From the NCBI RefSeq assembly GCF_006345805.1, contig NC_043022.1:24800001-24864000 (forward strand): DNA of 64,000 nt, in the 5' to 3' direction. A model generated the notes under the pieces. That model had not been told where the DNA came from. It saw nothing but the letters and a program-made list of their open reading frames with translations, and made no database searches. A program made the translations under genes and the position numbers. Source of the stretch: Octopus sinensis (Eukaryota). Positions 1,703 to 63,030 of the stretch are shown here, one piece after another (the first letter of the stretch is position 1; each line of letters begins with the position of its first letter).

Positions 1703-2104
1703 TATATATATATGCATATATATATATATATGCATGCATATATATATTTATATGCATATATATATATGCATATATATATATATCCTACGCATCTTCTCCC
1801 TTCACTGATACCCCCTCAATCCATTCCTCACCCCCACACATCACACCCCCAACATACCCCACCCCTACTACCCCCACATCCTCACTCAAAACCCACACCC
1901 CACCCTCACATCCCCCACCCCAACACTGCCACACCACCACCCCACACCACTCTGCACATGCCAGCACTGACCACTTCCCAGCACCCACATCATCATCCAC
2001 ACACCTACACATTACAGACGCACTCACTTACACATGCACACATCCACACGCCAAAGTCACCAGCCCCTATCCCTCTGTACATCTCATACTATAGACTACA
2101 TTTC

Positions 2105-2404
2105 AGAAATGTAGTCTATAGTATAAGATGTACTGAGGGACGATGCAGTAACAAGACAACGACGAACGTAGGGGAAACGACACGGAGCATAGGAGAGTGG
2201 GTAAATGAACATTGGAGAGAACTTAAAGAAGCAAAGAGCTCATCGATTTTGTATCAGCACGCCGAGCAGGAACATGGGGGATCAATCAACAACATATAGG
2301 TTAAAATCTTATCCACATATTGAACAGACGCAACAATTAGACAAATTACAGAAGCTACACACATAATAGAAGATAAATCTAGCCTGAATAGGAAACTGGA
2401 ATGG
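2105..2404 (+). pseudogene. Penelope-like element GIY-YIG endonuclease remnant
   Basis: [58 protein letters not shown] matches the PLE GIY-YIG pattern; in-frame stops present. Confidence 0.85.
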
Positions 2405-2787
2405 AACACTAGCACACACCCCCAACACACCACAACATATGACAGAATAAGATCCCCATAAACTGATAACAATATAAACAAAACAAAACACATAATGAAA
2501 TACACAGATAAACAAATGGAATTAAATAATTATATACATTAACAAAATTTTTAAAAAAATTAATTTAATTAAATACAAAAACAAAAAAAATATGTAGGTA
2601 TAAACACATGAACAAAATAAACAAAATTAAATTACACAAACGTGTATAAACAGGAGATACAAATATTACAGGCACTCTTCCCCCTACACACACACTAACT
2701 AAACATAGACATGCGCAAATAAAGACTCATACAAAATGGCTGATCGTTAGTAAGGAGAGACACACAAATAAGAAAGAAGAAAGCAAA

Positions 2788-4061: not shown

Positions 4062-4397
4062 ATATATGTATATCACGTGATCACGTGTCCGACCAGACCA
4101 TCAGATGTTGTTACACATCGCTGGTCACAATGCGTTCGCATTGTTTTTTAGCCTTCAAATGACGCCACCCCGCTGGCTAAGCAAGCAGGCCAACAGAAGA
4201 AAGAGTGGGAGAAAGAGTGGTGAAAGAGTACAGCAGGGATCACCTCCCCTGCCAGAGCCTCGTGGAGCTTTTAGGTGTCTTCGCTCAATAAACACTCACA
4301 ATGCCCGGTCTGGGAATCAAAAGCGCGATCCGGAATCAAAACCGCGATCTGCGACCGCGAGTCCTCTGCCCTAACCACTAGGCCATTGAGCCTCCAC
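4062..4397 (-). mobile_element. tRNA(Arg)-like-headed SINE, tail type a
   Basis: Head GGAGGCTCAATGGCCTAGTGGTTAGGGCAG.. with A/B-box-like motifs; tail GGTCGGACACGTGATCACGTGATA. Confidence 0.8.
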
Positions 4398-4398
4398 A

Positions 4399-4449
<51 letters not shown>

Positions 4450-4780
4450 TCGTGACGTATTTTGCCATTCAATATGGCTAACCCCTAAGGGTGGATGCTA
4501 CTGTAGTTTTTAGCCCCAGGAGGACACCTCCTCCAGCTGGCCATAGACACACTATCTGTGTCCTGATTGTCACACGCTGACGAGAGGTCAATACCTCGAA
4601 ACTCGAGTCCGTGTGTATCATAAGTTGAAGACGGGAAGGATGACTTCCCTTTGCAAATACTGACAGGAACAGATAGTTGTCTATGGCCAGCTGGAGGAGT
4701 GTGTCCTCCTGGGGCTAAAAACTACAGTAGCATCCACCCTTAGGGGTTAGCCATATTGAAATGGCAAAAATACGTCACGA
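4450..4780. mobile_element. Foldback element with ~110-bp inverted arms enclosing a hammerhead ribozyme
   Basis: 4450-4558 is the near-perfect reverse complement of 4671-4780; a diverged partial copy lies at ~35365-35500. Confidence 0.85.
4571..4615 (+). ncRNA. Canonical type I hammerhead ribozyme
   Basis: CACACG-CTGACGA-GAGGT(CAAT)ACCTC-GAAA-CTCGAG-TC-CGTGTG: all core nucleotides present, 6-bp stem I, 5-bp stem II, palindromic stem III ACTCGAGT, GUC triplet, predicted cleavage after 4609. Confidence 0.93.
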
Positions 4781-4819
4781 TGTGTTATGCTACTGTATAT
4801 ACTCACTTTGATATTTATC

Positions 4820-4851
<32 letters not shown>

Positions 4852-4965
4852 CATAATATATATATATACATATATATATATACACATTATATATATATAA
4901 TATATATATATATACACATATATATATAATACATATATATATATATACATATAATATATATATAC

Positions 4966-4998
<33 letters not shown>

Positions 4999-5018
4999 CA
5001 TATATTATATATATACAT

Positions 5019-5068
<50 letters not shown>

Positions 5069-5129
5069 TTATATATATATATATATATATATTACATACA
5101 TACATATATATATGATGATATATATATAT

Positions 5130-5532
5130 ATATTATACGAAAAAAACCTCCAGGCTACATCCCGAAAATTCATATCTTTGCCGAATTTCTACAATGTTTA
5201 CGGCGATTCATTTTTACGTCTTGATTTTTTATTTTTCATGCAATTTACGCACGCTTGTACGCATGGTGAACACAGTTCATGTCAAACAGCTGACTGAGTA
5301 AAGCTCACTATTCAGTGCATGGGATAAGGCCTAAACAAACACATTATCGATTTTTGCACTTGCGAGATGAATTTCGGAACAGAAATAGCGCAGTTCAATT
5401 TTCATTCATCTAAACTTTAAGTGACCCATTTTTGGTGGTTCTACGATTTGTTGGCTAGGAGGAGATGTGCCGGGAAGTTAAACACACAGACACACACAGA
5501 CACACAAGTTGAGTTTTATATATATATATAGA
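5130..5532 (-). mobile_element. Probable Helitron 5' portion
   Basis: Minus strand begins A|TCTATATATATATAAAACTCAACTTGTGTGTCTGTG, typical of non-autonomous Helitron 5' ends. Confidence 0.45.
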
Positions 5533-6519
5533 TGTTTCTGTACACTTGCACATGGGAAGCCCTTTTGCTGCTGAAGCGGTCTTAGGCGAAGTGTTCTTAC
5601 TTTTGTTACTTTTGTTGGTGGTGTTGGTATTAATGTTAATTTTGTTGTTGTTGATGGTGTTGTTGTTCACATTCATGTTGGTGGAGATTTCTGTCTGCGG
5701 TAGTAGTGACAGTATTGTTGGTGCTGGTGGTAGCAGTGATGCTATTTGTGGTATTGTTGGTGTTGGTAGAGGCGGTTGTAGAGACGTTACTGGTGCTGAT
5801 GGAGGTAGTGGTAGAGATGTTATACTGATGTTGTTGATGTTGTTGATGCTGTTGTTTATGTTAGTTTTATTACTGTTGGTAGAAGCGGTTATGATGATGC
5901 TGTTTGGCAATGCGTCTTTCTATTTTCATGTCGTTAGAAAGATGGCACAAATTCTCAGCAACTTCAACACTGAAAGACGCCGCTCAAAGAATTCTGAAGA
6001 GGCAAAAATGAAAAACAAACGCAAGTAAAATAAAAACATGAGCGAAAAAAAAATATTTAAAAGAATATGAAGATATGATATAAATAAACACATAAAAAAA
6101 GATTAAAATGAAAATATAGGAGAAAAAAATTCTGTAAAAATTATAAAAAGGAATAAAATTGATGAAAATTTGTATTGTTTGAAGATTGGAAGTTATTGAA
6201 GATTGTGTTGAGAGGGAAAAAAAACATAAACCAAAAGATACAAATATTTCGACCGCAAACATGTATAACGATGATTGAATAGAACTTGCGTGTATGTGTG
6301 TAAGTGTGCATGTTTGTGAGTATGCATGTGTTTGAGTGTATACATGTACGTGTGTATATATATATATATATATATATCATGATGGTGTACATACATATAT
6401 ATATATATATAACATCTTCATGATATATGCACACGTTTATATACACACACATTACCCACATTTATATATATATGTACACACATGCACACACATATGCGTT
6501 TATGTTATATATATATATA

Positions 6520-6574
<55 letters not shown>

Positions 6575-6576
6575 GT

Positions 6577-6615
<39 letters not shown>

Positions 6616-6634
6616 GTATATATATATATATATC

Positions 6635-6665
<31 letters not shown>

Positions 6666-6726
6666 ATATATATATATATATATCTATATATATATATATA
6701 TATATATACTTATACATGTACATATG

Positions 6727-6783
<57 letters not shown>

Positions 6784-7462
6784 GTATGTATATATATACA
6801 TTCTTATATATGTACATATGTATATATATATATGTATGTATGTATGTATGTATATGTAAATATACATGCACACACTCACAGAGGCACACACATGAATACT
6901 AAACTGGAGAGAGGGAGAGGGAGAGAGAGAGTGAGGTGAAGACAGAGGGGAAGAAAGCATGGAGGCTGTGGAAAGAGAGAGAGAGAAATATTACAGTTGT
7001 AGTGGCAGAGGCAGGAGAGAGAGAGCGAGAGAGAGAGAGAGAGAGAGAGAGACGGGGGGGGGGGAAAGAGCTGGGCAGAGTGATAGAGAATGTGAAAAGA
7101 AGCAAAAAGAAAAACAAAAAAAACAAAAAAAAAACCCACACACAAAGAAAAGGAGGGAAAAATGAAATATAAATAATGATAAAATGATTAAAAAGAATAA
7201 AAAAAATAAACAGCATGAAAAAATAACAGATTGTTTAACTACAGTGACAGAGGAAGAGGGGGGAGTGACCATACAAAGATGAACAATGCTTATGTTGATG
7301 TGTGTGTGTGTGTATTTATATTATATATTCCTTATGCTGATGTGTGTGTGTGTGTATGTGTTATATGTTCCTTATGTTAATGTGTGTATGTGTTTATATT
7401 ATATGGCCTCTATGTTGACGTGTGTCTATTTATACAATACACTCTTATGTTGATGTATGCTC

Positions 7463-8669: not shown

Positions 8670-9303
8670 CATGTCAAACAATGTTGGATATTATGTTGTG
8701 TCTGGGGAGAGTCATATTCTCTTAATGCCCTATTATCTAACACACACTCACTGGCTTGATTTCCTCTCATTTATCATTTATATTTTTTCTTCCAAATTTT
8801 TTGTTGCTTTCGCAACCTTGTCAATGGATGCTGACTCCATTGACAAGGTTGCAAAGCAATGAAAATTTTGGAAGAAAAAATATAAATAATAAATGAGTGG
8901 AAATCAAACCAGTGAATGTGTTATATTATAAGGCATTAAGACAATATGATTCTGCGGAGGCACATGGCCTAGTGGTTAGAGCAGCGAACTCGGGATCGCG
9001 GGTTCGAATCTCAGCCCAGACGATGTGTGTGTTTATGAGCGAAACACCTAATCTCCACGCGGCTCCGGCAGAAGATAATGGCGAAACTTCTGCTGGCTCT
9101 TTCACCACAACTTTCTCTCACTCTTTCCTCCTGCATCTTGCAGCTCACCTGCGATAGACCGGCGTCCCGTCCAGGTGGGGAACCTATACGCCAAGAAACC
9201 GGGAAACCGGCCCTTATGAGCCAGACATGGCTCGAGAAGGAACAAACAACAAAAATTATGATTCTTCCCAGATACAACATAATATCTGATATTGTTTGAC
9301 ATG
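8670..9303. mobile_element. Foldback (MITE-like) element with ~160-bp arms, right arm interrupted by a SINE
   Basis: 8670-8828 pairs with 8836-8953 plus 9257-9303 around a 7-nt loop. Confidence 0.75.
8954..9256 (+). mobile_element. tRNA(Arg)-like-headed SINE, tail type c, with 9-bp TSD
   Basis: TSD TATGATTCT at 8945-8953 and 9257-9265. Confidence 0.85.
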
Positions 9304-10859
9304 GAAATTGAACCAGTGAGTGTGTTACAAGGCATTAAAACAATATGATTCTCCCCTGACACACAAATTCACATAAAGAATCTTGTAAACCAAATACAAA
9401 AGCTAAGTGCAATAAGCTCCAGCCAAGTTAGCAAGACACTGTAAGACTCTGTGTTCTGCTCTCTAAAAATTAAGATAGCTACTCAACTGCTCCACTTCAT
9501 TAAAGCATGCATTTCCTCCAAGCTATACAAGAAATCTGTAAATTCAGCTGTGAAGTGGCTAGAACTCAGAGTACACACCAACACACGATGTTACAAAACA
9601 TCAAAAAGAAACTATATAAATATGTTGCCAGCTTCGTCTGGTTCCCGTGCCGGTGGCACGTAAAAAGCACCATCCGATCGTAGCCATTTGCCAGCCTCGT
9701 CTGGCACATAAAAAGCACCCACTACACTAACGGAGTGGTTGGCGTTAGGAAGGGCATCCAGCTGTAGAAACACTGCCAGATCAGACTGGAGCCTGGTGCA
9801 GCCTTCTGGCTTCCCAGACTCCTGTTGAACCGTCCAACCTATGCCAGCATGGAAAGCGGATGTTAAACGATATCAGCCGGTACCAGAAATGAAAGAGGGT
9901 CTACTGCATGAACTGAAAAGCACCACCACACTACACAAAAGAGACAGATTCATGACACTCACCCAACAAGACTACCACTGAGTAAACTATGCCTGTAACA
10001 AACACTTCAACAATAAACTCAAGAAGATGAAACAGCAACAATAACAATCTCAGCATGGTAAGAATCAACAAAGATACCCAAAGAACATTGACAGGATCGT
10101 CATGTCAGAATGTGAACTACCAGAAGACTTTGACACCAGGGCACCGGGAAACACCACCAACAACATCAACAACGGCAACAAGTGGAGGTGCAATGGCCCA
10201 GTGATTAGGTCAGCGGACTTACAGTCGTAAGAACGTGGTTTTGATTTCCAGACCGGGCATTGTGAGTCTTTATTGAGCAAAAACACCTAAGCTCCACTAG
10301 GCTCCGGCGGCTGGTGGTGGTGAACCCCGCTGTACTCTTTCACCACACCTTCTCTCACTCTTTATTCCTACTTCTGTCACAAAGCAGAGGAACCATGGTG
10401 TAACCCACTATGGTGTGGTAAACTTTCAGACCCTAGTCTAGATTGCAAATCCTCTATACTCCAGGATATACCCATTAAAAGCCACCGTTTATGGAATGAG
10501 GATAACAATGAAGCTTTCGCGCCTGTGTAACCGACAGTCTATCGTGTGTGGTGGATGGATCTTCAAGTTGCCACACGCATTCTTAGTAGCTTAGAGTAGG
10601 CTCGAATTAGAGATTATTTTTTGTGGCTAATGGTGTGAGTCCTGATTGGAAGAAGAAGAAGAAGAAGAAGAAGAGAAGAAGAAGAAGAAGAAGAAGAAGA
10701 AGAAGAAGAAGAAGAAGAAGAAGAAGAAGAAGAAGAAGAAGAAGAAGAAGAAGAAGAAGAAGAAGAAGACAGCAGCAGCAGCAGCAACAACTACTATAAC
10801 AGTAGTAATACTTGTAGCATCCTAGACTCTCTCTTCTATGACCCCAACAACAAATTGTA

Positions 10860-11100
10860 TGACGTGATGAGGATCTACCCGACAGACCTACCATTCAACA
10901 AGAGGGTCTGTATCCCACCATGGACTGATAGTGAGACAGAGGCAAAGATGTCTTTTACCTAGAAATAAACTCTGACACATCTTAGCTCAGTGTAACAAAA
11001 CCATTAAAAAATATGAGGGGGAGACCCACTAACTCAGTTCACTTGTCATCAATGGCCTACAAAAATTGAAACAGCAAATGAGGAACAGGGAATTAGTGTG
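10860..11100 (+). pseudogene. Penelope-like ORF fragment (region preceding the RT)
   Basis: RIYPTDLPFNKRVCIP..ETEAK and NGLQKLKQQMRNRELVC resemble PLE pre-RT motifs; frameshifts and stops. Confidence 0.45.
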
Positions 11101-11122
11101 TGCATGTGTGTGTGTGTGTGTG

Positions 11123-11175
<53 letters not shown>

Positions 11176-11804
11176 TCTCTTTTTAATTTTGTGTTAATTT
11201 TAACCAACCATCTGCTCGGTAGCAAAGTTGTGAAGGAAAGCAGCTTGTTTTGTTCATCCTCCTTTAAATTTTAAAAAGGGTCTAGCACATTTCTATTGTC
11301 CCAGATATCCCAATCATTTGTCACACTCGAATTAAGAGTTGCATTCTCTCCCCCACAAACCCAAGTTTAGCCAGCTTGTTTAGGAGTTTCACCATCGTTA
11401 GTTGTACCACAGTCCTATAGAAGAAACAGGATGAGGTAGCTTGTCTACATCTTAGACATGAATGTTTTGGCTGACTATTGGGTGGTAATTTTCAGCTGTG
11501 GTGGTTTGGCTATTTGGGGGATGAGAAGAGTGATGACTCTTGACAGCCATGAAGGAACATTTAACATGCACTTGATACTCCTCTCAATGTGTCATATTAA
11601 ATCTCTCTGATAAAAGTTGAAATTTTTAAACCTATATCCTGTAATAAGATTTCCTGTTTCTGATTCGTTCAGGAGTGTTTCTCATACTTTGTTGATTTTG
11701 TAAAGTTTTTTGTTCAATATTCTTGTTGTATCTCTGTTCTAAATCATCATCTATCCATTCAACTTGTACAGACTCTTCTGGTCTCAAAGTTGGGAGGTGA
11801 ATAT

Positions 11805-27594: not shown

Positions 27595-27603
<9 letters not shown>

Positions 27604-27902
27604 TATTAGAGACAAAACCACTATTTTGCAAAACAAACAAGGAAAGACTTAATCAATACATAAAATTTTAATAAATAGTCAAAAAAACCGCCACTACAAT
27701 TGTTACTTGTCTTGATCGACAATCTTCAGGTGGACTTCATAATTTGAAACTGACTTATGGAAGTCCACCTGAAGATTGTCGATCAAGACAAGTAACAATT
27801 GTAGTGGCGGTTTTTTTGACTATTTATTAAAATTTTATGTATTGATTAAGTCTTTCCTTGTTGTTTTGCAAAATAGTGGTTTTGTCTCTAATAATATTTT
27901 AT
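27595..27902. mobile_element. Near-perfect ~300-bp palindrome (Penelope-type inverted terminal repeat)
   Basis: Arms of ~145 bp with 2 indels around a ~12-nt loop; each arm carries a hammerhead-like motif. Confidence 0.9.
27765..27807 (+). ncRNA. Hammerhead-like motif with A13U core mismatch (mirror copy on minus strand at 27691-27733)
   Basis: CCAC-CTGAAGA-TTGTC(GATCAA)GACAA-GTAA-CAATTG-TA-GTGG. Confidence 0.65.
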
Positions 27903-29742: not shown

Positions 29743-30735
29743 TAATTTTATTTTGCAGCACATACAGAATTTCTGGAATGAAAATCTCCATGGAACTCAG
29801 TTATACTGGAAAACAGCCTGCAAACTGACGTCAATAGGGAAGGATATATTGGAACTGTCTTAAAGAATCTTAAAAAAAAAAAAAACCATGTGCCAATTTC
29901 AATTTTCCTTCTTTTCAACCTGATTTGAAATGAACTATGAACCAACTTTGTTTCTTTAGAAATATTTGTTTCAAAGATTTCTACCTATCTCTATCAATTA
30001 TTGCTTTTTTTTTTTGCTAACAAATAAAATGTAATTACTATACGTCTAATTAGTTCGTACTGAGGAGACATAGTCATGTTGAAACAGTCTGTCTACGAAT
30101 AGTAGAGGAATAAACAGTGTCGTTGAAGAGTAATTAAATTAAATAAATATTAAGGAAGAAAAAAAGCGATATGCTGTATTTTATATAATTAACAAGAGAA
30201 TAAGATTTCCAGCTAGAGTTCTCTTTCTCTCTCTCTCCTGCAAAGTAACTGAACAATCATTAAGGAACTAGTGATATGTGTATGTATATGTATGTATGTA
30301 TGTATGTATGTATATATGTATGTATGTATGTATGCATATCTATATACATATATGTGGATATATACATGTATATATATGTATGTATATGTATGTATATACA
30401 TATATGTGGATTTATATATATATATATATGGATGTATATATATGTATGTCTATGTATGTATATGTATGTATGCATATGTGTGTATAAATATATATATATA
30501 TATGTATATATATATAAATATGCATACATATACATATGTATATATTTATATATACATATACACACACATAAATATTTGCACATGTACATGTATGTGTGTA
30601 TATATATGCAAATATACATGCATAAATATACATACATACATATATATATGTGTGTGTGTGTATGTACACACACACACATAATATATGTACATGTATTTCT
30701 GTTTTCATGAGAATATCATATATCTAATATAGGTA

Positions 30736-31230
30736 TATGTATGCATGTATGTATGTATGTATGTATGTATGTATGTATGCATGCATGCATGCATGCATGT
30801 ATGCATGCATGCATGTATGTATGTATGTATGTATGTATGTATGTATGCATGCATGCATGCATGCATGTATGTATGTATGTATGTATGCATGCATGTATGC
30901 ATGCATGTATGTATGTATGTATGTATGTATGCATGCATGCATGCATGCATGTATGTATGTATGTATGCATGCATGTATGTATGTATGTATGTATGTATGT
31001 ATGCATGCATGCTTGTATGTATGTATGCATGTATGTATGTATGTATGTATGTATGTATGTATGCATGTATGTATGTATGTATGTATGTATGTATGTATGC
31101 ATGTATGTATGTATGTATGTATGTATGTATGTATGTATGTATGCATGTATGTATGTATGTATGAATGTATGTATGTATGTATGTATGTATGTATGTATAT
31201 ATGTATGTATGTATGTATGCATGTATGTAA
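30736..31230. repeat. (GTAT)n/(GCAT)n tetranucleotide microsatellite
   Basis: Read directly. Confidence 0.95.
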
Positions 31231-32236
31231 GTATGTATGTATATATATATTCATATATATTCAGTCTCCTTGTGGAAATATATCCTAAGAAAAAGTCATG
31301 AAATTTTCTGGTAGCTGTGTGGTAGCGAGTTGGCTTCCCAGCCACATGGATCCAGGCTCATTGCGTGATCGTTGTCAGAGCAACAAGATGGCCTCTGTGC
31401 TGATGGCATGTAAAAAGCACCATTTGAGCGTGATCGTTATCTGCATCACCTTACTGGCATTTGTGCTGGTGGCACGTGAGAAAAAAACATTTGAGCGAGG
31501 TCGTTGCCAGTGCCGCTGGATTGGATCCTGTGCAGGTGGAACATAAAAAATACCATTTGAGCGTGGTCATTGCCAGTACCGCCAGACTGGCCCCCATGCC
31601 GGTGGCACGTAAAAGCACCCACTACACTCTTGGAGTGGTTGGCGTTAGGAAGGGCATCAAGCTGTAGAAACCCTGCCAGATCAGATTGGAGCCTGGTGCA
31701 GCCATCTGGTTCGCCAGTCCTCAGTCAAATCGTCCAACCCATGCTAGCATGGAAAGCGTACGTTAAACAATGATGATGATGATGAAAAGTAATAAGTATT
31801 AGTGTCAAGCAATTTGATGAAGATTCTTGAAGGCAGTGCTCTAGCATGGCCATAATCTAATGACAGAAACAAGTAAACAATAAAAATCATACACACATAC
31901 ATACATACATACATGTATGCATACATACATACATACAAACATACACACATACAAACATACACACATACATACATGCATACATACATACAAACATACATAA
32001 ATACATACATGCATACATACACACAGACATACATACATACACACACACATACATACATACATACAAACATACACACACATATACATACATACGTACAAAC
32101 ATACACACACATACATACATACATACATGCATACATACATATATGCAATTGTATGTATGTACTTATGTATAAGAAGTTGCATGACCACTCAGCTCTGGAT
32201 GCACATTTACTTATAACAGAAACGAGTGTAAGCCAA

Positions 32237-32336
32237 NNNNNNNNNNNNNNNNNNNNNNNNNNNNNNNNNNNNNNNNNNNNNNNNNNNNNNNNNNNNNNNN
32301 NNNNNNNNNNNNNNNNNNNNNNNNNNNNNNNNNNNN
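32237..32336. other. Assembly gap (100 N)
   Basis: Run of N; true size unknown. Confidence 0.99.
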
Positions 32337-35252: not shown

Positions 35253-35821
35253 CTCTTTTACTCTTTTACTTTTTTCAGTCATTGACTGCGGCCATGCTGT
35301 AGCACCGCCTTTAGTCGAGCACATCGACCCCCAGGACTTATTCTACATATATATGTATGTATTACTGACGAGGGAAGGATGACCTACCTTTGCAAATACC
35401 ATTAGGGCACAGAAAGTGTGTCTATAGCCAGTTGGAGAAGATGTTCTCCTGGGGCTACAAGCTACAGTAACATCCACCCTTAGTGGTTGGCCATATTTAA
35501 AACTAACATTATTTCTGCTATAAGGCAAATAGCCTTTCTACTTATTTTATCAATTCCGAAAGAATGAAAGGCGAAGTCAAGCTGTAGGGAATTTGAACTC
35601 GGAACGTAAAGCTGAAAAAAAAAATGCCGGTAATAGACGCAGGAGTGGCTGTGTGGTAAGTAGCTTGCTTATTAACCACATGGTTCTGGGTTCAGTCCCA
35701 CTGCATGGCACCTTGGGCAAGTGTCTTCTACTATAGCCTCAGGCCAACAAAGCCTTGTGAGTGGATTTGGTAGACAGAAACTGAAGAAGCCATTATATAT
35801 ATATATATATATATATAATAT

Positions 35822-35867
<46 letters not shown>

Positions 35868-35882
35868 TATATATATACATAA

Positions 35883-36065
35883 AGGGATTGTTTACGAAAA
35901 GAAAAACAAAAGATGAAGACAGGTGGTGTACAAAACAAACAGATGTATTAGTATAACGCTTAGGAATAGAAAAAGTCTTTTGCGTTTCGAGCCTATGCTC
36001 TTCTACAGAAAGGTACACAGAAAAAAACAAGGAGAGAAACAAGGAGATAGAAAAAATGTGTGTAG
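35883..36065 (-). mobile_element. Short Penelope-type non-autonomous element with variant hammerhead (35976-36013)
   Basis: Minus strand CTTT-CTGTAGA-A-GAGC(ATAG)GCTC-GAAA-CG-CA-AAAG; homologous to 50281-50440. Confidence 0.65.
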
Positions 36066-39828: not shown

Positions 39829-40545
39829 ATTGCCCTACCAACATCAATCTACGCAGGAAGAACTTGGTAAATAACCTCCAAGATCACTCAGTGGTTGAAT
39901 GCATTCTCCAGTCGATGTCTTCGCAGAATACTTAAGAATATTTACAAAGACAGAATCACAAACTCTGAAGTCCTGAGAAGTTAAGTTAATTTTTTGGCCA
40001 AAAAAAAAAAGGCAAGGCCATGTAGGGGGACATGGAGTTATGTATAGGGTGGTGTTCATGCAAAGAGTTCAGGCCATTTGTGGTCAAGGGAGACTTTTAA
40101 CCGAGTGGTCGTCGGCATCTTCACTATCTCGTCCGGCAGCTTATTCCACGGATCCGCAAACCGGACGGAGAAGGCCCCTCTCCTTCGATTGAGATGAAAT
40201 CGTCGCAGATAGAGCTTTTCGGAGTGACCCCGCAGCCGACGCTCTGGAGCAGGAGTGAAGAACAGCTCTTTCGAGAGGTTACACTTTCCACTTATGATGT
40301 TGTGGAACCAATCTGTGCAGCCTGCAGGCAACTGTGGCGGAAAGAAGAGTGAGATTTGCAGGCCATGTCTTCCGACTGCCAGTAGAACGAATGCCCAATG
40401 GGTATCACCAGAGGGACGAGAAAAAGAAGGCAGACTCACGAAGAAAATCTGAAGCAATTAAGCATCTCCTGGGAAGATGCAGGCGACCAAGCTCAACGAT
40501 TGGAGACATCTTGCTGCCCAATGTACAGGTCAACTGTTTGAGGGG
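39829..40545 (+). pseudogene. RTE-clade LINE C-terminal remnant split by a CR1 insertion
   Basis: IALPTSIYAGRTW*..LNAFSSRCLRRILK..DRITNSEVLR (39829-39983) resumes as SLQATVAERRVRFAGHVFRLP../WVSPEGREKEGR (from ~40296). Confidence 0.8.
39984..40295 (-). mobile_element. CR1-type LINE 3' end
   Basis: HNIISGKCNLSKELFF..RRLRGHSEKLYLRRFHLNRRRGAFSVRFADPWNKLP is a CR1 ORF2 C-terminus pattern. Confidence 0.85.
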
Positions 40546-47295: not shown

Positions 47296-47835
47296 CAGGG
47301 GATGGACAAAATAATGGAAACACCGAGAATCATATAGCATCATAATTTTGAAATAGCTATAAAACCGTCAAAAACCTGTTTTTTAAATGTTCTTTTGATT
47401 TATTATCAATGTTGCTTAATATGTTTTGCTGAAATTACTGTTTCTTTTCAGATTTCATCAGAAAACGGTATTTAAAATTCATTAAAATGAGAGATCTATC
47501 GGACTTTCAAAGAGGTCAAATTGTTGGTACTCGTATGGCAGGCGCTAGCGTAACGAAAATAGCCGAAATGTTTGGTGTATCAAGAAGTACAGTCTTGAAA
47601 GTAATTACAGCCTTTGAGAAAGAAGGTAAAAACTTCTTCATCGAAAGAAAAACTCCGGAAGAAAACCAAAACTTTCAGATAGGGACCGTTGAAATCTTAG
47701 GCGAATTGTTAGAAAGGATTACAAAAGTACGCCTCCCAAAATTACTGCAGAGCTTAATGACTACCTTGAGAACCCAGTTTCTACAAGAACTGTTCGCTGG
47801 GAGCTGCACAAAGCCGGATTTCACGGCTCGTGCGA
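47296..47835 (+). mobile_element. Tc1/mariner transposon 5' half with frameshifted transposase N-terminus
   Basis: TA|CAGGGGATGGACAAAATAATGGAAACACC TIR; MRDLSDFQRGQIVG..VSRSTV..SGRKPKLSDRD..ITAELN..VSTRTVRWELHKAGFHG; no DDE domain or right TIR. Confidence 0.9.
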
Positions 47836-47924
47836 CCATGTAGAGTTCCCCATTGCAGTGCCGAAGGTTGACTGTACCATTCTAAGGTACCTGTTTTCGG
47901 GTATCGTAAAGGGGAGAAGAAGGA

Positions 47925-50479: not shown

Positions 50480-50558
<79 letters not shown>

Positions 50559-50591
50559 ACATATATATATATATATGTATATAAAGTTAAT

Positions 50592-50790
50592 CCAGACATG
50601 AAAACACAAAGAGAAAACACAACAACGCGAGGACGTGGAACAAATATAGTATTATTGGACGCTCAGGAAGGAAGGGAAGAAGGAGGGTTAAACGTTTCGA
50701 GCGGAGCTCTTCGTCAGAAACATAGGAAGAGGAAAGATCCACAGAAGGGAAGACGGAGGGAAAAAAATCGCCAACGGTACACACGCGGTC
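50592..50790 (-). mobile_element. Short Penelope-type element with hammerhead at 50687-50721
   Basis: Minus strand GTTT-CTGACGA-A-GAGC(TCC)GCTC-GAAA-CG-TT-TAAC; homologous to 62770-62975. Confidence 0.75.
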
Positions 50791-51174
50791 ACAATACGGA
50801 AATCTCTCTCAGGTTGCATTTCACTGTCTGAACGAATTTACACGTCAGACTATGTAGTCCTCGAAACGTCTCTGAATGAAAAGATGGGATGATCGCCATT
50901 GGAAGTCATATATGCATAGATAGACCCACTCAACCAGGGCTCAGCTGGGGCTTAAACAACAACTACAATAATTAACAACAACAGCATAAACAACAATAAA
51001 TATGAAAGAAATTACTGTTGAAGCTTAACTAATTCCGATGTTCATCCTGTCCGGATTGTCATATCAATCTGCTACATTCCACTGGGTTTTTTTATGAAGC
51101 TGTATGATAAGCTGTTAGATAAACTTGACCACGCATCTTAATCATGCGTTGGCCATTACGTATCGCCGCATGTA

Positions 51175-51291
51175 TATCTGTCTATCTATCTGTCTGTCTG
51201 TTTGTCTCTGTCTCTCTCTCTCTCTCTATGTATCTGTCTGCCTGTCTGTCTCTCTATTTATTCGTCTGTCAGTCTGCCTGTATTCTGTCTG

Positions 51292-51324
<33 letters not shown>

Positions 51325-51471
51325 ATATCTATCTATCTATCTATCTATATATCTATCTATTTGTCTGTCTGTCTATCTGTCTGTCTATCTGTCTATCTAT
51401 TTGTCTGTCTATCTATCTATCTATCTATTTGTCTGTCTGTCTATCTGTCTGTCTATCTGTCTATCTATTTG

Positions 51472-51524
<53 letters not shown>

Positions 51525-51668
51525 TTGTCAGTCTATCTATCTGTCTGTCTGTCTGTCTGTCTGTCTCCATTTATTTGTCTGTCAGTCTGCTTGTATTCTG
51601 TCTGTCTGTCTCTCTATCTATCCATCCATCTTTCTGTCTGTTTGTGTCTATCTGCCCTCCTCTCTCTC

Positions 51669-51735
<67 letters not shown>

Positions 51736-51746
51736 GCCTGTCTGCC

Positions 51747-51783
<37 letters not shown>

Positions 51784-51786
51784 GCC

Positions 51787-51849
<63 letters not shown>

Positions 51850-51850
51850 T
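51175..51850. repeat. (TCTA)n/(TCTG)n microsatellite
   Basis: Read directly. Confidence 0.95.
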
Positions 51851-52695
51851 TATCATCCGTCTTAAAGTTCTGAGTTCAAATTCCGCCAAGGTCGACTTTG
51901 CTTTTTATCCTTCGGTGGTTAGTAATATAAGTACCAGTTGAGCAGTGGGGGTCGATGTAATCGACTTACCCACCCCGCTGAACCCATTTTGCGGCAAGAA
52001 ATGCAGATGGGGACAGCAGTCTCAAACTCCCTTATTCACCAAATGCCACATATCAGAGACGGTCTCAAGTAGTGAAAGTGTGGGAAAGTTAATGGCGGTA
52101 CTGCAGTATGGCAACACCTCCCGAGCTGAAACCAGTAAAGAATACACAACACACACACACGTATATAGATATGCATGCATGTATATGTATATAAATATTT
52201 GTGTGTGTATATGTGTATCCGTGTATATGTGTATGAACACACACATCGCCTTATATTTATACTTATACTTATACTTATACTTATACGCTGCCACCACCGT
52301 CCCAATCACCTCCACCACCACCACCACCACCACCACCATACCACCACCAACCCTACCACCACCACCGCTGCCACCAATACCTATTTCTTTACTACCCACA
52401 AGGGGCGGCTAAACACAGAGGGGACAAACAAGGTCAGACAAACGGATTAAGTCGATTACATTGACCCCAGTGCGTAACTGGTACTTAATTTATCGACCCC
52501 GAAAGGATGAAAGTCAAAGTCGACCTCGGCAGAATTTGAACTCAGAATGTGACGGCAGTCAAAATACCTATTTCTTTACTGCCCACAAGGGGCTAAACAT
52601 AGAGGGGACAAGCAAGGTCAGACAGACGGATTAAGTCGATTACATCGACCCCAGTGGGTATGCGTAACTGGTACTTAATTTATCGAACCCGAAAG

Positions 52696-61643: not shown

Positions 61644-62849
61644 CATACATATGCGACAGGCTTCTTTCAGTTTCCGTCTACCAAATTCACTCACTAGGCT
61701 ATGGTCGGCCTGAGGCTATAGTAGAAGACACTTGCCCAAGGTGCCACACAGTGGGACTGAACCCGGAACCATGTGGTTGGTAAGCAAGCTTCTTACCACA
61801 CAGCCACTCCTGTGTTACTCAGGTACTCAGCTGTGAGTCCACTTCATCTTATAACGGAAACAGCTGTAAGCTAATGAAGTTCACATAAACGTTTATTGTT
61901 TTGTCTTAACGTTTTCTAATGTGTATATATGCATATATGTATGTATGTATGCATGAATGTATGCATGTATGTATGCATATATCTGTCTGTCTATCCATCT
62001 ATAAATACAGATATGTATATATGTATATAAATATAAATGTAAATGTATGTGTATGTGTATATGTGTATATACATACATACTTACATACAGATGCAGCCGT
62101 ACATGCACACACACATATACACACACACACACACACACTACTATACACACACACTCCTAACAAGTATACGTCTTAAGTTGATGCTAAATTAAAGTGGCAT
62201 AAAAATGATTACAGTTTTTTTTTTTCATTTTAAAAATTGATGCTTATTTTTGAGTTACCATTTATTTAACCATGCTCAAGGAACATTTTGAAGCACAGAT
62301 TTTCTTGTATTGATTTATGCTAATGGTTTTACTTCCACAGTTTATTCTTGTTTATTTTAGCTGTCAAATTAAGAACTGAGAAAGAAAAAGGGGAAAAAAA
62401 GTAATTTTGAACAATCTTATGGAACACAAAGAAACGGAAACAATTCGGAGTATCAACGAAACATTGAAATCAGGGACCTGTCAAATAGGGTAAAATATAA
62501 TACTTCTTCCTAAGTCATATAGACTGATAAGGGCCGGTTTCCCAGATTCTCTGGTGTGTAAATTCCCCAGTGGGACGGGACGCCGGTCTGTTGCAGGATT
62601 ACTCATTTTTGCCAGCTGAGTGGACTGGAGCAATGTGAAATGAAGTGTTTTGCTCAAGAACACAACGCATCACCCGGTCCAGGAATCGAAACCACAACCA
62701 TACGATCATGAGTTCAACACCCTAACCACTAAGCCATGGCCTCCACGCACACACATATATAAATATATTTATATAAATGTGACCACGTGTGTACTGTTGG
62801 CGACTTTTTTTCCTCCCTCTTCCCTTCTTTGGATCTTTCCTTTTCCTAT

Positions 62850-62884
62850 GTTTCTGACGAAGAGCTCCGCTCGAAACGTTAAAT
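62850..62884 (+). ncRNA. Minimal hammerhead motif in a Penelope-type short element (62770-62975)
   Basis: GTTT-CTGACGA-A-GAGC(TCC)GCTC-GAAA-CG-TT-AAAT; palindromic ACGT stem III. Confidence 0.75.
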
Positions 62885-62990
62885 CCTCCTTCTTTCCTGA
62901 GCGTCCAATAACACTGTACTTGTTCCACGTCCTCGCGTTGTTGTTTTCTCTTTGTGTTTTCATGTTTGGATTAACTATATATATATATAT

Positions 62991-63030
<40 letters not shown>

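What the first reader, a model, noticed from the sequence alone, without database searches (positions are those of the whole stretch)
4450..4780. Fully canonical hammerhead ribozyme in the loop of a 330-bp rod-like foldback
Seen: every core nucleotide, a GUC site and perfect stems. Loop II (CAAT, 4589-4592) is complementary to ATTG (4566-4569) just 5' of stem I, a possible pseudoknot tertiary contact. The ~110-bp inverted arms would fold the transcript into a long rod. Established: hammerheads occur in PLEs and retrozymes, and loop II-stem I contacts raise activity. Inference: a small self-cleaving mobile RNA family, whose long duplex would also be an ADAR substrate in a heavily RNA-editing lineage.
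Basis: partly seen in the sequence, partly recalled or inferred. Interest (0 to 1): 0.8.

Follow-up and report, generated by a model that had tools for sequence, protein, structure and literature searches.

The report
Hammerhead ribozyme inside an octopus retroelement foldback
A genuine-looking self-cutting RNA motif (a type I hammerhead ribozyme) sits at the tip of a 330-bp DNA palindrome in an octopus genome, and the palindrome is most likely a by-product of how a ribozyme-carrying retroelement inserted, so this is an ordinary new member of a known kind.

Summary
Window 4571-4615 (+) is a complete type I hammerhead. It has every core nucleotide, helix I of 6 bp, helix II of 5 bp, helix III of 2 bp with a palindromic UCGA loop, and a GUC site that cuts after 4609. 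Rfam scores it 32.2 bits, just under the gathering score of 34. It lies in the 98-nt centre of a foldback with arms 4451-4565 and 4664-4779.

The arms form 113 Watson-Crick pairs. There are no G-U pairs and no substitutions, only five 1-nt indels. That indicates a young inverted duplication made at the DNA or cDNA level, not a rod kept by selection on RNA.

The host is an octopus. The element sits in a (TA)n microsatellite. The other copies found are 5'-shortened.

This head-to-head layout, with microsatellite target and extra "tail", is described for Penelope-like elements (PLEs). I also found it in a fetched GIY-YIG/hammerhead element (L025).

Best reading: a 5'-truncated PLE-type or retrozyme-type insertion paired with an inverted shorter copy. 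With one ribozyme and no tandem unit, circles are not expected. The proposed pseudoknot and ADAR editing remain untested. It is a new member of a known kind, of modest interest.

The parts
4398..4450 (.). (TA)n microsatellite directly abutting the left arm. This is the left part of the presumed target.
   Evidence: Sequence read. It is not part of the upstream SINE, because other copies of that SINE end at the same point without a microsatellite.
4451..4565 (-). Left arm. It is an inverted copy of the last 116 nt of the unit. I read it as a shorter, 5'-truncated copy whose 3' end points left.
   Evidence: The alignment to the reverse complement of 4664-4779 shows 0 substitutions and five 1-nt indels, all in homopolymer or dinucleotide runs. 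All 113 pairs are Watson-Crick.
4566..4663 (+). Unique 98-nt centre. It is the extra 5' part of the longer (+) copy and holds the hammerhead and a second small hairpin (GGGAAGGAUGACUUCCC, 4633-4649).
   Evidence: Symmetry ends at 4565/4566 and at 4663/4664. Copy 2 runs uninterrupted across the 4663/4664 boundary, so the centre and the right arm form one ancestral unit.
4571..4615 (+). Type I hammerhead ribozyme motif. Predicted self-cleavage is 3' of C4609.
   Evidence: Rfam RF00163 full-length match, 32.2 bits, E = 2.4e-6. Descriptor hit. Dimer cofold gives an 8-bp helix III.
4664..4779 (+). Right arm. It is the 3' part of the longer (+) copy. The inferred element 3' end is ...GGCAAAAATACGTCACG.
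   Evidence: It is homologous to copy 2 (about 83%) and to an O. sinensis fragment.
4780..4819 (+). 40-nt non-repetitive stretch between the right arm and the point where (TA)n resumes. It is a candidate one-sided 'tail' of the kind described for PLE insertions.
   Evidence: Sequence read. It has no other copy in the window. PLE tails of 30-40 bp at one end are described in PMC8557442. Calling this stretch a tail is inference.
4820..5140 (.). (TA)n-rich microsatellite. This is the right part of the presumed target.
35366..35501 (+). Second copy of the family. It covers only the right part of the centre plus most of the right arm, at about 83% identity. It has no hammerhead, no inverted partner and lacks the last ~23 nt. 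A short TA/TG-rich stretch precedes it.
   Evidence: blastn and pairwise alignment. Flanking repeats were mapped.

Best explanation
This is a young insertion of a hammerhead-bearing, non-coding retroelement tail into a (TA)n microsatellite of an octopus genome. The tail is of the PLE (Penelope-like element) pLTR or non-LTR 'retrozyme' kind.

Two copies of the element's 3' end lie head to head. A longer (+) copy, 4566-4779 (214 nt), reaches far enough 5' to include the ribozyme. An inverted shorter copy, 4451-4565, is truncated before the ribozyme. The 330-bp 'rod' is therefore a consequence of target-primed reverse transcription, with two-ended priming or a template switch. It is not a structure shaped by selection on the RNA.

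If the + strand is transcribed, the hammerhead at the hairpin tip should cut between C4609 and C4610. Because helix III is only 2 bp with a palindromic loop, cutting is probably best when two molecules pair through the 8-nt palindrome ACUCGAGU. The two halves would stay held together by the 115-bp duplex, and no circle can form from one site.

Shown here: the motif, the exact inverted duplication, the microsatellite context, the existence of shortened copies, and the octopus host.

Inferred: the retrotransposition mechanism, the PLE partner, cleavage itself, and any fate of the dsRNA (ADAR or Dicer).
For: 1. Ribozyme. All core positions and three helices are present, and Rfam gives E = 2.4e-6. 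A descriptor hit occurs by chance about once per 300 windows. The helix sizes match the published 'canonical metazoan type I' architecture: helix I 6 bp, helix II 4 bp, helix III 1-2 bp capped by a 2-4 nt palindromic loop (PMC4209133).

2. Arms. They form 113 Watson-Crick pairs with 0 G-U and 0 substitutions, only slippage-type indels. The unit alone is not rod-like (z = -2.2).

3. Orientation. The ribozyme is in sense relative to the shared 3' region. The four arms or copies extend to different 5' points: 214, 115 and about 136 nt in the window, and about 70 nt in O. sinensis L024.

4. Published PLE insertion features (PMC8557442). These are strong 5' truncation, an inverted 5'-truncated copy abutting the 5' end, a (TA)n target preference, a 30-40 bp tail at one end, and a hammerhead near the 3' end. 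The locus fits each one.

5. Precedent in fetched data. L025 carries a GIY-YIG ORF with a minimal hammerhead. It is arranged as a head-to-head pair (9059-9979 and 10552-11472, 99.3% identical, 572-nt unique centre). It sits inside an (AATC)n microsatellite, with about 60 extra nt at one end.

6. Other PLE-type material in the window. There is a minimal-hammerhead repeat in (TA)n (62778-63030 and 50521-50793) and a GIY-YIG remnant whose nearest relatives are octopus proteins.

7. Background. PLEs are reported as recently active in Octopus vulgaris (PMC13282606). Animal retrozymes are reported to derive from PLE pLTRs and to occur as dispersed monomers (bioRxiv 10.64898/2026.07.22.740005).
Against: - No RT/GIY-YIG ORF carrying this 3' sequence was found, so the autonomous partner is unknown.
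- Only one copy carries the ribozyme, so conservation and covariation could not be tested.
- Copy 2 lacks the terminal 23 nt, so a shared 3' end is not demonstrated.
- PLE hammerheads are usually the minimal type, whereas this one is canonical. Canonical motifs are typical of tandem retrozymes, and no tandem is present here.
- The Rfam score is below the gathering threshold.
- A second hammerhead-free foldback next to (TA)n (27598-27900) shows that palindromic elements of another origin, such as MITEs, may exist in this genome.
- The 'tail' and the absence of a target-site duplication are weak evidence in AT-rich flanks.
Confidence: 0.58

Rival explanations
1. It is a cut-and-paste foldback DNA transposon (MITE) with 115-bp terminal inverted repeats. 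The hammerhead is merely carried in its internal loop.
For: The inverted arms are long and near-identical. Another near-perfect foldback of about 300 bp with no ribozyme lies next to a (TA)n tract at 27598-27900, with TA on both sides. MITEs and Tc1/mariner elements are annotated in octopus (PMC13282606). A Tc1-like ORF lies at 47487-47843.
Against: There is no convincing target-site duplication, only AT/AT in an AT-rich flank. Neither of the other two copies has both arms or the terminal 23 nt. A text search found no report of hammerheads carried by MITEs, whereas animal hammerheads are consistently tied to PLEs and retrozymes. A protein-coding element (L025) shows the same head-to-head geometry, so that geometry does not require a MITE.
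Confidence: 0.2
2. A single 214-nt retro-insertion came first. A host replication or repair error later duplicated its distal 116 nt in inverted orientation, for example fold-back priming or a template switch at the cruciform-prone (TA)n tract.
For: The duplication is exact apart from slippage-type indels. The (TA)n tracts on both sides are themselves long inverted repeats.
Against: The inverted copy ends exactly at the element's outer terminus and lands exactly at the (TA)n boundary. That is what two-ended priming predicts and would be a coincidence for a random repair event. The same layout occurs in L025.
Confidence: 0.1
3. One reading: a functional, selected self-cleaving rod-like RNA. It would be a retrozyme or viroid-like mobile RNA, or a hairpin-RNA gene, whose long duplex is used by ADAR or Dicer.
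For: The ribozyme is intact. The RNA fold is extremely stable. Retrozyme circRNAs are described as highly self-paired (PMC7229834). A generic long-hairpin miRNA model (mir-584) scores 40.6 bits.
Against: There is one ribozyme, no tandem unit, and no ribozyme on the other strand. The duplex has none of the G-U pairs or mismatches expected of RNA-level evolution. The unit alone is not rod-like. The other copies keep neither the ribozyme nor the foldback. The mir-584 score is half the gathering score and reflects only hairpin shape.
Confidence: 0.07
4. The hammerhead is a chance or decayed look-alike with no catalytic ability.
For: The Rfam score is below gathering. Helix III is weak and the catalytic monomer fold is not the MFE.
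Against: All invariant positions are present and all three helices are perfect. E = 2.4e-6. The descriptor gives about 0.003 chance hits per window. The weak palindromic helix III is the norm for metazoan type I motifs (PMC4209133).
Confidence: 0.05

Closest known systems
Canonical metazoan type I hammerhead ribozymes (Rfam RF00163; Schistosoma Sm-alpha, newt satellite 2, invertebrate retrozyme hammerheads)
   Same: The core is identical and the topology is type I. Helix I is 6 bp followed by an internal loop. Helix II is 4-5 bp with an A-rich loop (UCAAUA here, against the Rfam consensus CAAAUA). [quoted passage not shown] Twenty-two unrelated metagenomic type I motifs share the same ...CGAAACUCGAGUC helix III.
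   Different: The score is 1.8 bits under the Rfam gathering threshold. The helix II sequence differs from the seed. The conserved loop-loop contacts could not be checked.
Penelope-like element (PLE) insertions: pLTRs with hammerheads, inverted 5'-truncated copies, microsatellite targets (Craig et al. 2021, PMC8557442; Cervera & de la Pena 2014, PMC4209133)
   Same: The copies lie head to head with their 3' ends outward. The 5' truncation points vary. The target is (TA)n, there is a one-sided ~40-nt extra stretch, and the hammerhead lies about 170 nt from the 3' end. L025 shows the same geometry.
   Different: No RT-EN ORF is attached and the element is only 214 + 115 nt. The ribozyme is canonical rather than the minimal type usual in metazoan PLEs.
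Animal non-LTR retrozymes (Cervera & de la Pena 2020, PMC7229834; Li et al. 2026 preprint)
   Same: They carry a canonical type I hammerhead. The unit size (214 nt) lies within the reported 170-400 nt range and GC is 47% (<50%). Dispersed monomers derived from PLE termini are described.
   Different: There is no head-to-tail repeat, so no second cleavage site and no circle from this locus. The self-pairing comes from an inverted DNA duplication, not from the unit itself.
MITEs / foldback DNA transposons
   Same: The arms are long terminal inverted repeats and the element is small and non-coding.
   Different: There is no clear target-site duplication. The other copies lack one arm and the terminus. 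The centre carries a sense-oriented ribozyme, which is typical of retroelements.

Membership tests
Hammerhead ribozyme, type I (RF00163) | Invariant core: C3 U4 G5 A6 N7 G8 A9, G12 A13 A14, the A15.1-U16.1 pair, and H17 at the cleavage site | tested here: met
   CUGACGA 4577-4583, GAA 4598-4600, A4601-U4608, C4609
Hammerhead ribozyme, type I (RF00163) | Three helices around the core, with helix I open (type I topology) | tested here: met
   Helix I 6 bp, helix II 5 bp, helix III 2 bp plus a UCGA loop. The match covers the full model, positions 1-45.
Hammerhead ribozyme, type I (RF00163) | Score at or above Rfam's curated gathering threshold (34 bits) | tested here: not met
   32.2 bits, so the default scan reports nothing. 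The E-value of 2.4e-6 is nevertheless significant.
Hammerhead ribozyme, type I (RF00163) | Tertiary contact between loop 2 and the helix I internal loop | tested here: inconclusive
   An internal loop follows the 6-bp helix I, and loop 2 is A-rich. The ATTG/CAAT complementarity exists but is about 5% likely by chance, and there is no second copy to test covariation.
Hammerhead ribozyme, type I (RF00163) | Site-specific self-cleavage | not testable with these tools
   This needs an in vitro transcription and cleavage assay. Folding predicts a dimer-favoured active form.
Animal non-LTR retrozyme | Head-to-tail tandem repeats of 170-400 bp, each with a type I hammerhead | tested here: not met
   There is no direct repeat of the unit and only one hammerhead of this family in 64 kb.
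Animal non-LTR retrozyme | Low GC (<50%) and a unit RNA that is highly self-paired | tested here: inconclusive
   GC is 47%. The unit alone has z = -2.2. The strong pairing comes only from the inverted duplicate.
Animal non-LTR retrozyme | Expression as linear and circular RNAs | not testable with these tools
   No transcriptome data are available.
Penelope-like element insertion | ORF with RT and GIY-YIG endonuclease belonging to the same element | tested here: not met
   There is no ORF in or next to 4451-4779. The GIY-YIG remnant at 2105-2455 shares no sequence with it. Searches with translated arm frames found nothing.
Penelope-like element insertion | Strong 5' truncation, with an inverted 5'-truncated copy abutting the 5' end | tested here: met
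   The pair is 214 nt and 115 nt, head to head. The other copies are about 136 and about 70 nt. The feature is described in PMC8557442.
Penelope-like element insertion | Insertion bias for microsatellites such as (TA)n, and a one-sided 30-40 bp tail | tested here: met
   (TA)n lies on both sides, with 40 nt of unique sequence at one end only. Reading this as a 'tail' is inference.
Penelope-like element insertion | Hammerhead in the terminal repeat near the 3' end, usually a minimal variant | tested here: inconclusive
   The hammerhead is 170 nt from the 3' end and in sense orientation. It is canonical, not minimal.
MITE / foldback DNA transposon | Terminal inverted repeats | tested here: met
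   The arms are 115-116 nt.
MITE / foldback DNA transposon | Target-site duplication of fixed length flanking the repeats | tested here: inconclusive
   Only AT/AT is shared. 8-bp, 3-bp and TA duplications do not fit. The flanks are AT-rich.
MITE / foldback DNA transposon | Multiple copies sharing both termini | tested here: not met
   Copy 2 and the L024 fragment each have one arm only, and copy 2 lacks the last 23 nt. The sample is only three copies.

The most novel reading that the evidence does not exclude
A family of 'hairpin retrozymes'. In this reading, PLE-type head-to-head insertions routinely place a live hammerhead at the apex of a long perfect hairpin transcript. Self-cleavage would open the loop and release a blunt ~115-bp dsRNA. 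That dsRNA would feed siRNA production or act as an ADAR substrate or sponge in a heavily RNA-editing lineage. This would be a new route from a ribozyme to dsRNA biology.
Probability: 0.05. Interest if true: 0.7.

Novelty: new member of a known kind. Interest (0 to 1): 0.3.

Why it matters
It adds a cephalopod example of a canonical type I hammerhead tied to a PLE- or retrozyme-like element. Until now, cephalopod hammerheads appear only as Rfam counts, such as 235 Hammerhead_1 hits in the giant squid (PMC6962438).

It also carries a practical warning. A 'rod-like' fold around a ribozyme can be an insertion artefact, namely head-to-head retro-copies, rather than a viroid-like structure.

If transcribed, such loci would make perfect dsRNA in an animal with extensive A-to-I editing. 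That gives a cheap, testable link between retroelement insertions, ribozymes and dsRNA sensing. This is a modest advance, not a new principle.

Tried and rejected
- **More copies through the protein collections.** Exact look-ups of two ORFs in the element and a homology search with a 78-aa translated frame found nothing.
- **DNA pattern scans.** A motif shared by both window copies gave 0 hits in metagenome contigs. The ribozyme pattern gave 0 hits in viral contigs.
- **Looser hammerhead pattern.** It returned 22 metagenomic loci, L001-L022. They are unrelated elements, and none lies in a foldback.
- **Extra octopus DNA.** Three loci were fetched through relatives of the GIY-YIG remnant. Two are octopus (43 kb) and yielded only one ~70-nt fragment. 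The third, L025, is not octopus, since it has no octopus SINE.
- **Does copy 2 start at the ribozyme cleavage site?** This would have implied cleavage in vivo. I rejected it because the 27 nt upstream of GGGAAGG align no better than shuffled or TA/TG-rich controls (p about 0.23).
- **Are the three hammerhead-bearing units in the window related?** I found no similarity beyond the core.
- **Is the mir-584 hit meaningful?** No. It scores half the gathering threshold and reflects generic hairpin shape.
- **Pfam on the GIY-YIG remnant itself.** No hit. The word-index search also failed. Only the exhaustive HMMER search found relatives.
- **tRNA scan.** ARAGORN found no tRNA genes. The tRNA-like SINE heads are too decayed.

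Full report
**The observation.**
- Helix I: CACACG (4571-4576) pairs with CGUGUG (4610-4615).
- Core: CUGACGA (4577-4583).
- Helix II: GAGGU/ACCUC, closed by the loop CAAU (4589-4592).
- G12 A13 A14 lie at 4598-4600.
- Helix III: A4601-U4608 and C4602-G4607, capped by UCGA.
- C17 is 4609, so cleavage would fall between 4609 and 4610.

Rfam's default scan of the window reports nothing. A permissive scan of 4430-4800 gives a full-length Hammerhead_1 match at 32.2 bits against a gathering score of 34, with E = 2.4e-6. A structural descriptor of my own found two sites in the real window and one in 300 simulated windows. The motif is therefore not a chance match, although it narrowly fails Rfam's curated cut-off.

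The helix sizes match what Cervera and de la Pena call the canonical metazoan type I hammerhead. That architecture has helix I of 6 bp, helix II of 4 bp, and helix III of 1-2 bp capped by a 2-4 nt palindromic loop (PMC4209133).

Such a weak helix III is known to favour action as a dimer. Consistent with this, the catalytic monomer fold is -8.7 kcal/mol, an alternative monomer fold is -14.5, and two molecules together reach -33.9. The two-molecule form has an 8-bp intermolecular helix III made from the palindrome ACUCGAGU.

**The foldback.** The arms are 4451-4565 and 4664-4779, around a 98-nt unique centre (4566-4663) that holds the ribozyme and a small hairpin. The 333-nt stretch 4450-4782 folds at -247.9 kcal/mol with z = -27.

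The important detail is how the arms differ. There are no substitutions, only five single-base indels in homopolymer or dinucleotide runs. All 113 arm pairs are Watson-Crick, with no G-U pair. That is the signature of a recent inverted duplication made at the DNA or cDNA level. It is not what an RNA rod maintained by selection looks like.

The unit without its inverted partner (4566-4779) folds only slightly better than shuffled sequence (z = -2.2).

**Surroundings and host.** The left arm abuts a (TA)n tract (4398-4450). On the right, 40 nt of unique sequence (4780-4819) come before (TA)n resumes and continues to about 5140. The upstream SINE ends at 4397, and its other copies are not followed by a microsatellite. 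The (TA)n is therefore local target sequence rather than a SINE tail.

The window is AT-rich, repeat-dense and without obvious genes. One of its SINEs matches loci from Octopus bimaculoides and O. sinensis at 87-89%. A GIY-YIG remnant in the window has an O. bimaculoides protein among its two best hits. The host is therefore an octopus.

**Other copies.** A second copy lies at 35366-35501 with about 83% identity. It covers the right part of the centre and most of the right arm. It runs uninterrupted across the 4663/4664 boundary, but it has no ribozyme, no inverted partner and not the last 23 nt. A fragment of about 70 nt of the arm is present in the O. sinensis locus L024, also next to an AT-rich simple repeat.

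The four arms or copies thus share the 3'-proximal region and reach different 5' points (214, 115, about 136 and about 70 nt). The ribozyme is in sense orientation relative to that shared 3' region.

**What it most likely is.** Craig et al. (PMC8557442) list these features for Penelope-like elements (PLEs):
- heavy 5' truncation;
- an inverted 5'-truncated copy placed directly at the 5' end, giving inverted repeats;
- a bias for microsatellites such as (TA)n;
- a 30-40-bp tail at one end;
- hammerheads near the 3' end.

The locus fits each of these features.

I also found a concrete precedent while fetching relatives of the window's GIY-YIG remnant. In L025 (ENA ERZ25066847), a GIY-YIG ORF ends in a minimal hammerhead. 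The element forms a head-to-head pair (9059-9979 and 10552-11472, 99.3% identical) around a 572-nt unique centre. It sits inside an (AATC)n microsatellite, with about 60 extra nt at one end only. That is the octopus architecture at larger scale. In L025 both arms are long enough to include the ribozyme. In the octopus element only the longer copy reaches it, which puts the ribozyme in the 'loop'.

PLEs are reported as recently active in O. vulgaris (PMC13282606). [quoted passage not shown]

I therefore read the locus as a young PLE-type or retrozyme-type insertion, made by target-primed reverse transcription with two-ended priming or a template switch.

**What this means for function.** With one ribozyme, no tandem unit and no ribozyme on the other strand, a transcript of this locus could be nicked at 4609/4610 but could not release a monomer or form a circle. 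The halves would remain paired through the arms.

The proposed Watson-Crick contact between loop II (CAAU) and ATTG (4566-4569) is present in the sequence. It is about 5% likely by chance (my estimate) and cannot be tested without more ribozyme-bearing copies. ATTG is also the first four bases after the left-arm junction. Reviews describe Watson-Crick loop contacts as typical of type II motifs (PMC6155905). Canonical metazoan type I motifs are described as using conserved loop nucleotides (PMC4209133).

ADAR editing of the duplex is a reasonable expectation for long dsRNA in a coleoid, but it was not tested here.

**Rivals.** A MITE is the main alternative. The arms are long, and a second, ribozyme-free foldback lies next to (TA)n at 27598-27900 with TA on both sides.

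Against the MITE reading:
- there is no convincing target-site duplication;
- no other copy has both arms or the terminus;
- a text search found no report of hammerheads in MITEs.

Lesser alternatives are a later host-level inverted duplication, a selected hairpin or ribozyme RNA, and a chance motif. They are scored in the rival list.

**Limits.** No octopus genome could be searched by DNA. Only about 107 kb of octopus sequence was available (the window plus L023 and L024). The autonomous partner, the family consensus, covariation and expression all remain open. The PLE identity of the GIY-YIG relatives rests on the endonuclease domain, the minimal hammerhead and the insertion geometry. No RT domain was seen in these 5'-truncated copies.

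**Verdict.** The hammerhead is real and well formed, in an octopus retroelement fragment. The rod is best explained as an insertion by-product. This is a new member of a known kind, and interest is about 0.3.

Noticed in passing
window 62778-63030 (+) and 50521-50793 (-): Two copies (87%) of a ~250-270-bp repeat, each bounded by TA-rich microsatellite. They carry CUGACGA-A-GAGC-UCC-GCUC-GAAA-CG-UU. This fits the published PLE 'minimal hammerhead': an extra nucleotide after A9, a G10.1-C11.1 pair, a palindromic 15.2-16.2, no helix III, and helix I of 4 bp. Rfam gives no hit. Helix I is broken in the second copy.
   Followed up: partly
window 30053-30099 (+): A second complete hammerhead-like motif: helix I 7 bp, CUGAGGA, helix II 5 bp with a G10.1-U11.1 pair, helix III 3 bp, GUC. 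It lies 174 nt upstream of a long (TATG)n tract, has no foldback and has no other copy in the window. Rfam support is weak (RAGATH-1 hammerhead 16.7 bits, E = 2.9).
   Followed up: partly
window 2070-2455 (+): Remnant of a GIY-YIG endonuclease ORF (NVVYSIRC...[16 protein letters not shown]...) with two in-frame stops. It was found only by the exhaustive HMMER search, and an uncharacterised Octopus bimaculoides protein is among its two best hits. Its 5' end carries a 35-nt inverted duplication of itself (2070-2104 against 2106-2140, 93%). No RT was seen. It is probably a 5'-truncated PLE-like copy.
   Followed up: partly
L025 9059-11472 (ENA ERZ25066847, not octopus): Head-to-head pair of a GIY-YIG ORF element (arms 921 bp, 99.3% identical, 572-nt centre). 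Identical minimal hammerheads lie on opposite strands near both outer ends. The pair is inserted in an (AATC)n microsatellite, with about 60 extra nt at one end.
   Followed up: partly
window 27598-27900: A ~300-bp near-perfect foldback (arms about 140 nt, ~20-nt loop, 93% identical with gaps) directly next to a (TA)n tract, with TA on both sides. It has no ribozyme and occurs once in the window. It is a possible MITE. A generic miRNA hairpin model (mir-3910) hits it.
   Followed up: partly
L001-L022 (JGI metagenome contigs, mostly Ga0126336): Twenty-two type I hammerheads share the helix III ...CGAAACUCGAGUC. Most belong to one dispersed repeat family (GGAGCAA-CUGAUGAG-GUUCACUGAAGAACC-GAAACUCGAGUC-UUGCUU). 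L001 has two copies 662 nt apart in tandem. They are presumably invertebrate host DNA in a metagenome.
   Followed up: partly
window, many sites (e.g. 35637-35900, 4200-4397, 35255-35344): The window is saturated with several SINE-like families, each present 5-20 times. One matches O. bimaculoides and O. sinensis loci at 87-89%. ARAGORN finds no intact tRNA.
   Followed up: partly
window 47487-47843 (+); 40056-40457 (-): N-terminal helix-turn-helix part of a Tc1/mariner-like transposase ORF, and a C-terminal fragment that resembles a LINE ORF2 tail. Both were identified by eye only.
   Followed up: no
window 32237-32336: A run of 100 N (an assembly gap) inside a microsatellite-rich stretch. 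Very long compound microsatellites lie at about 30270-31345, 6290-6900 and 51100-51900.
   Followed up: no
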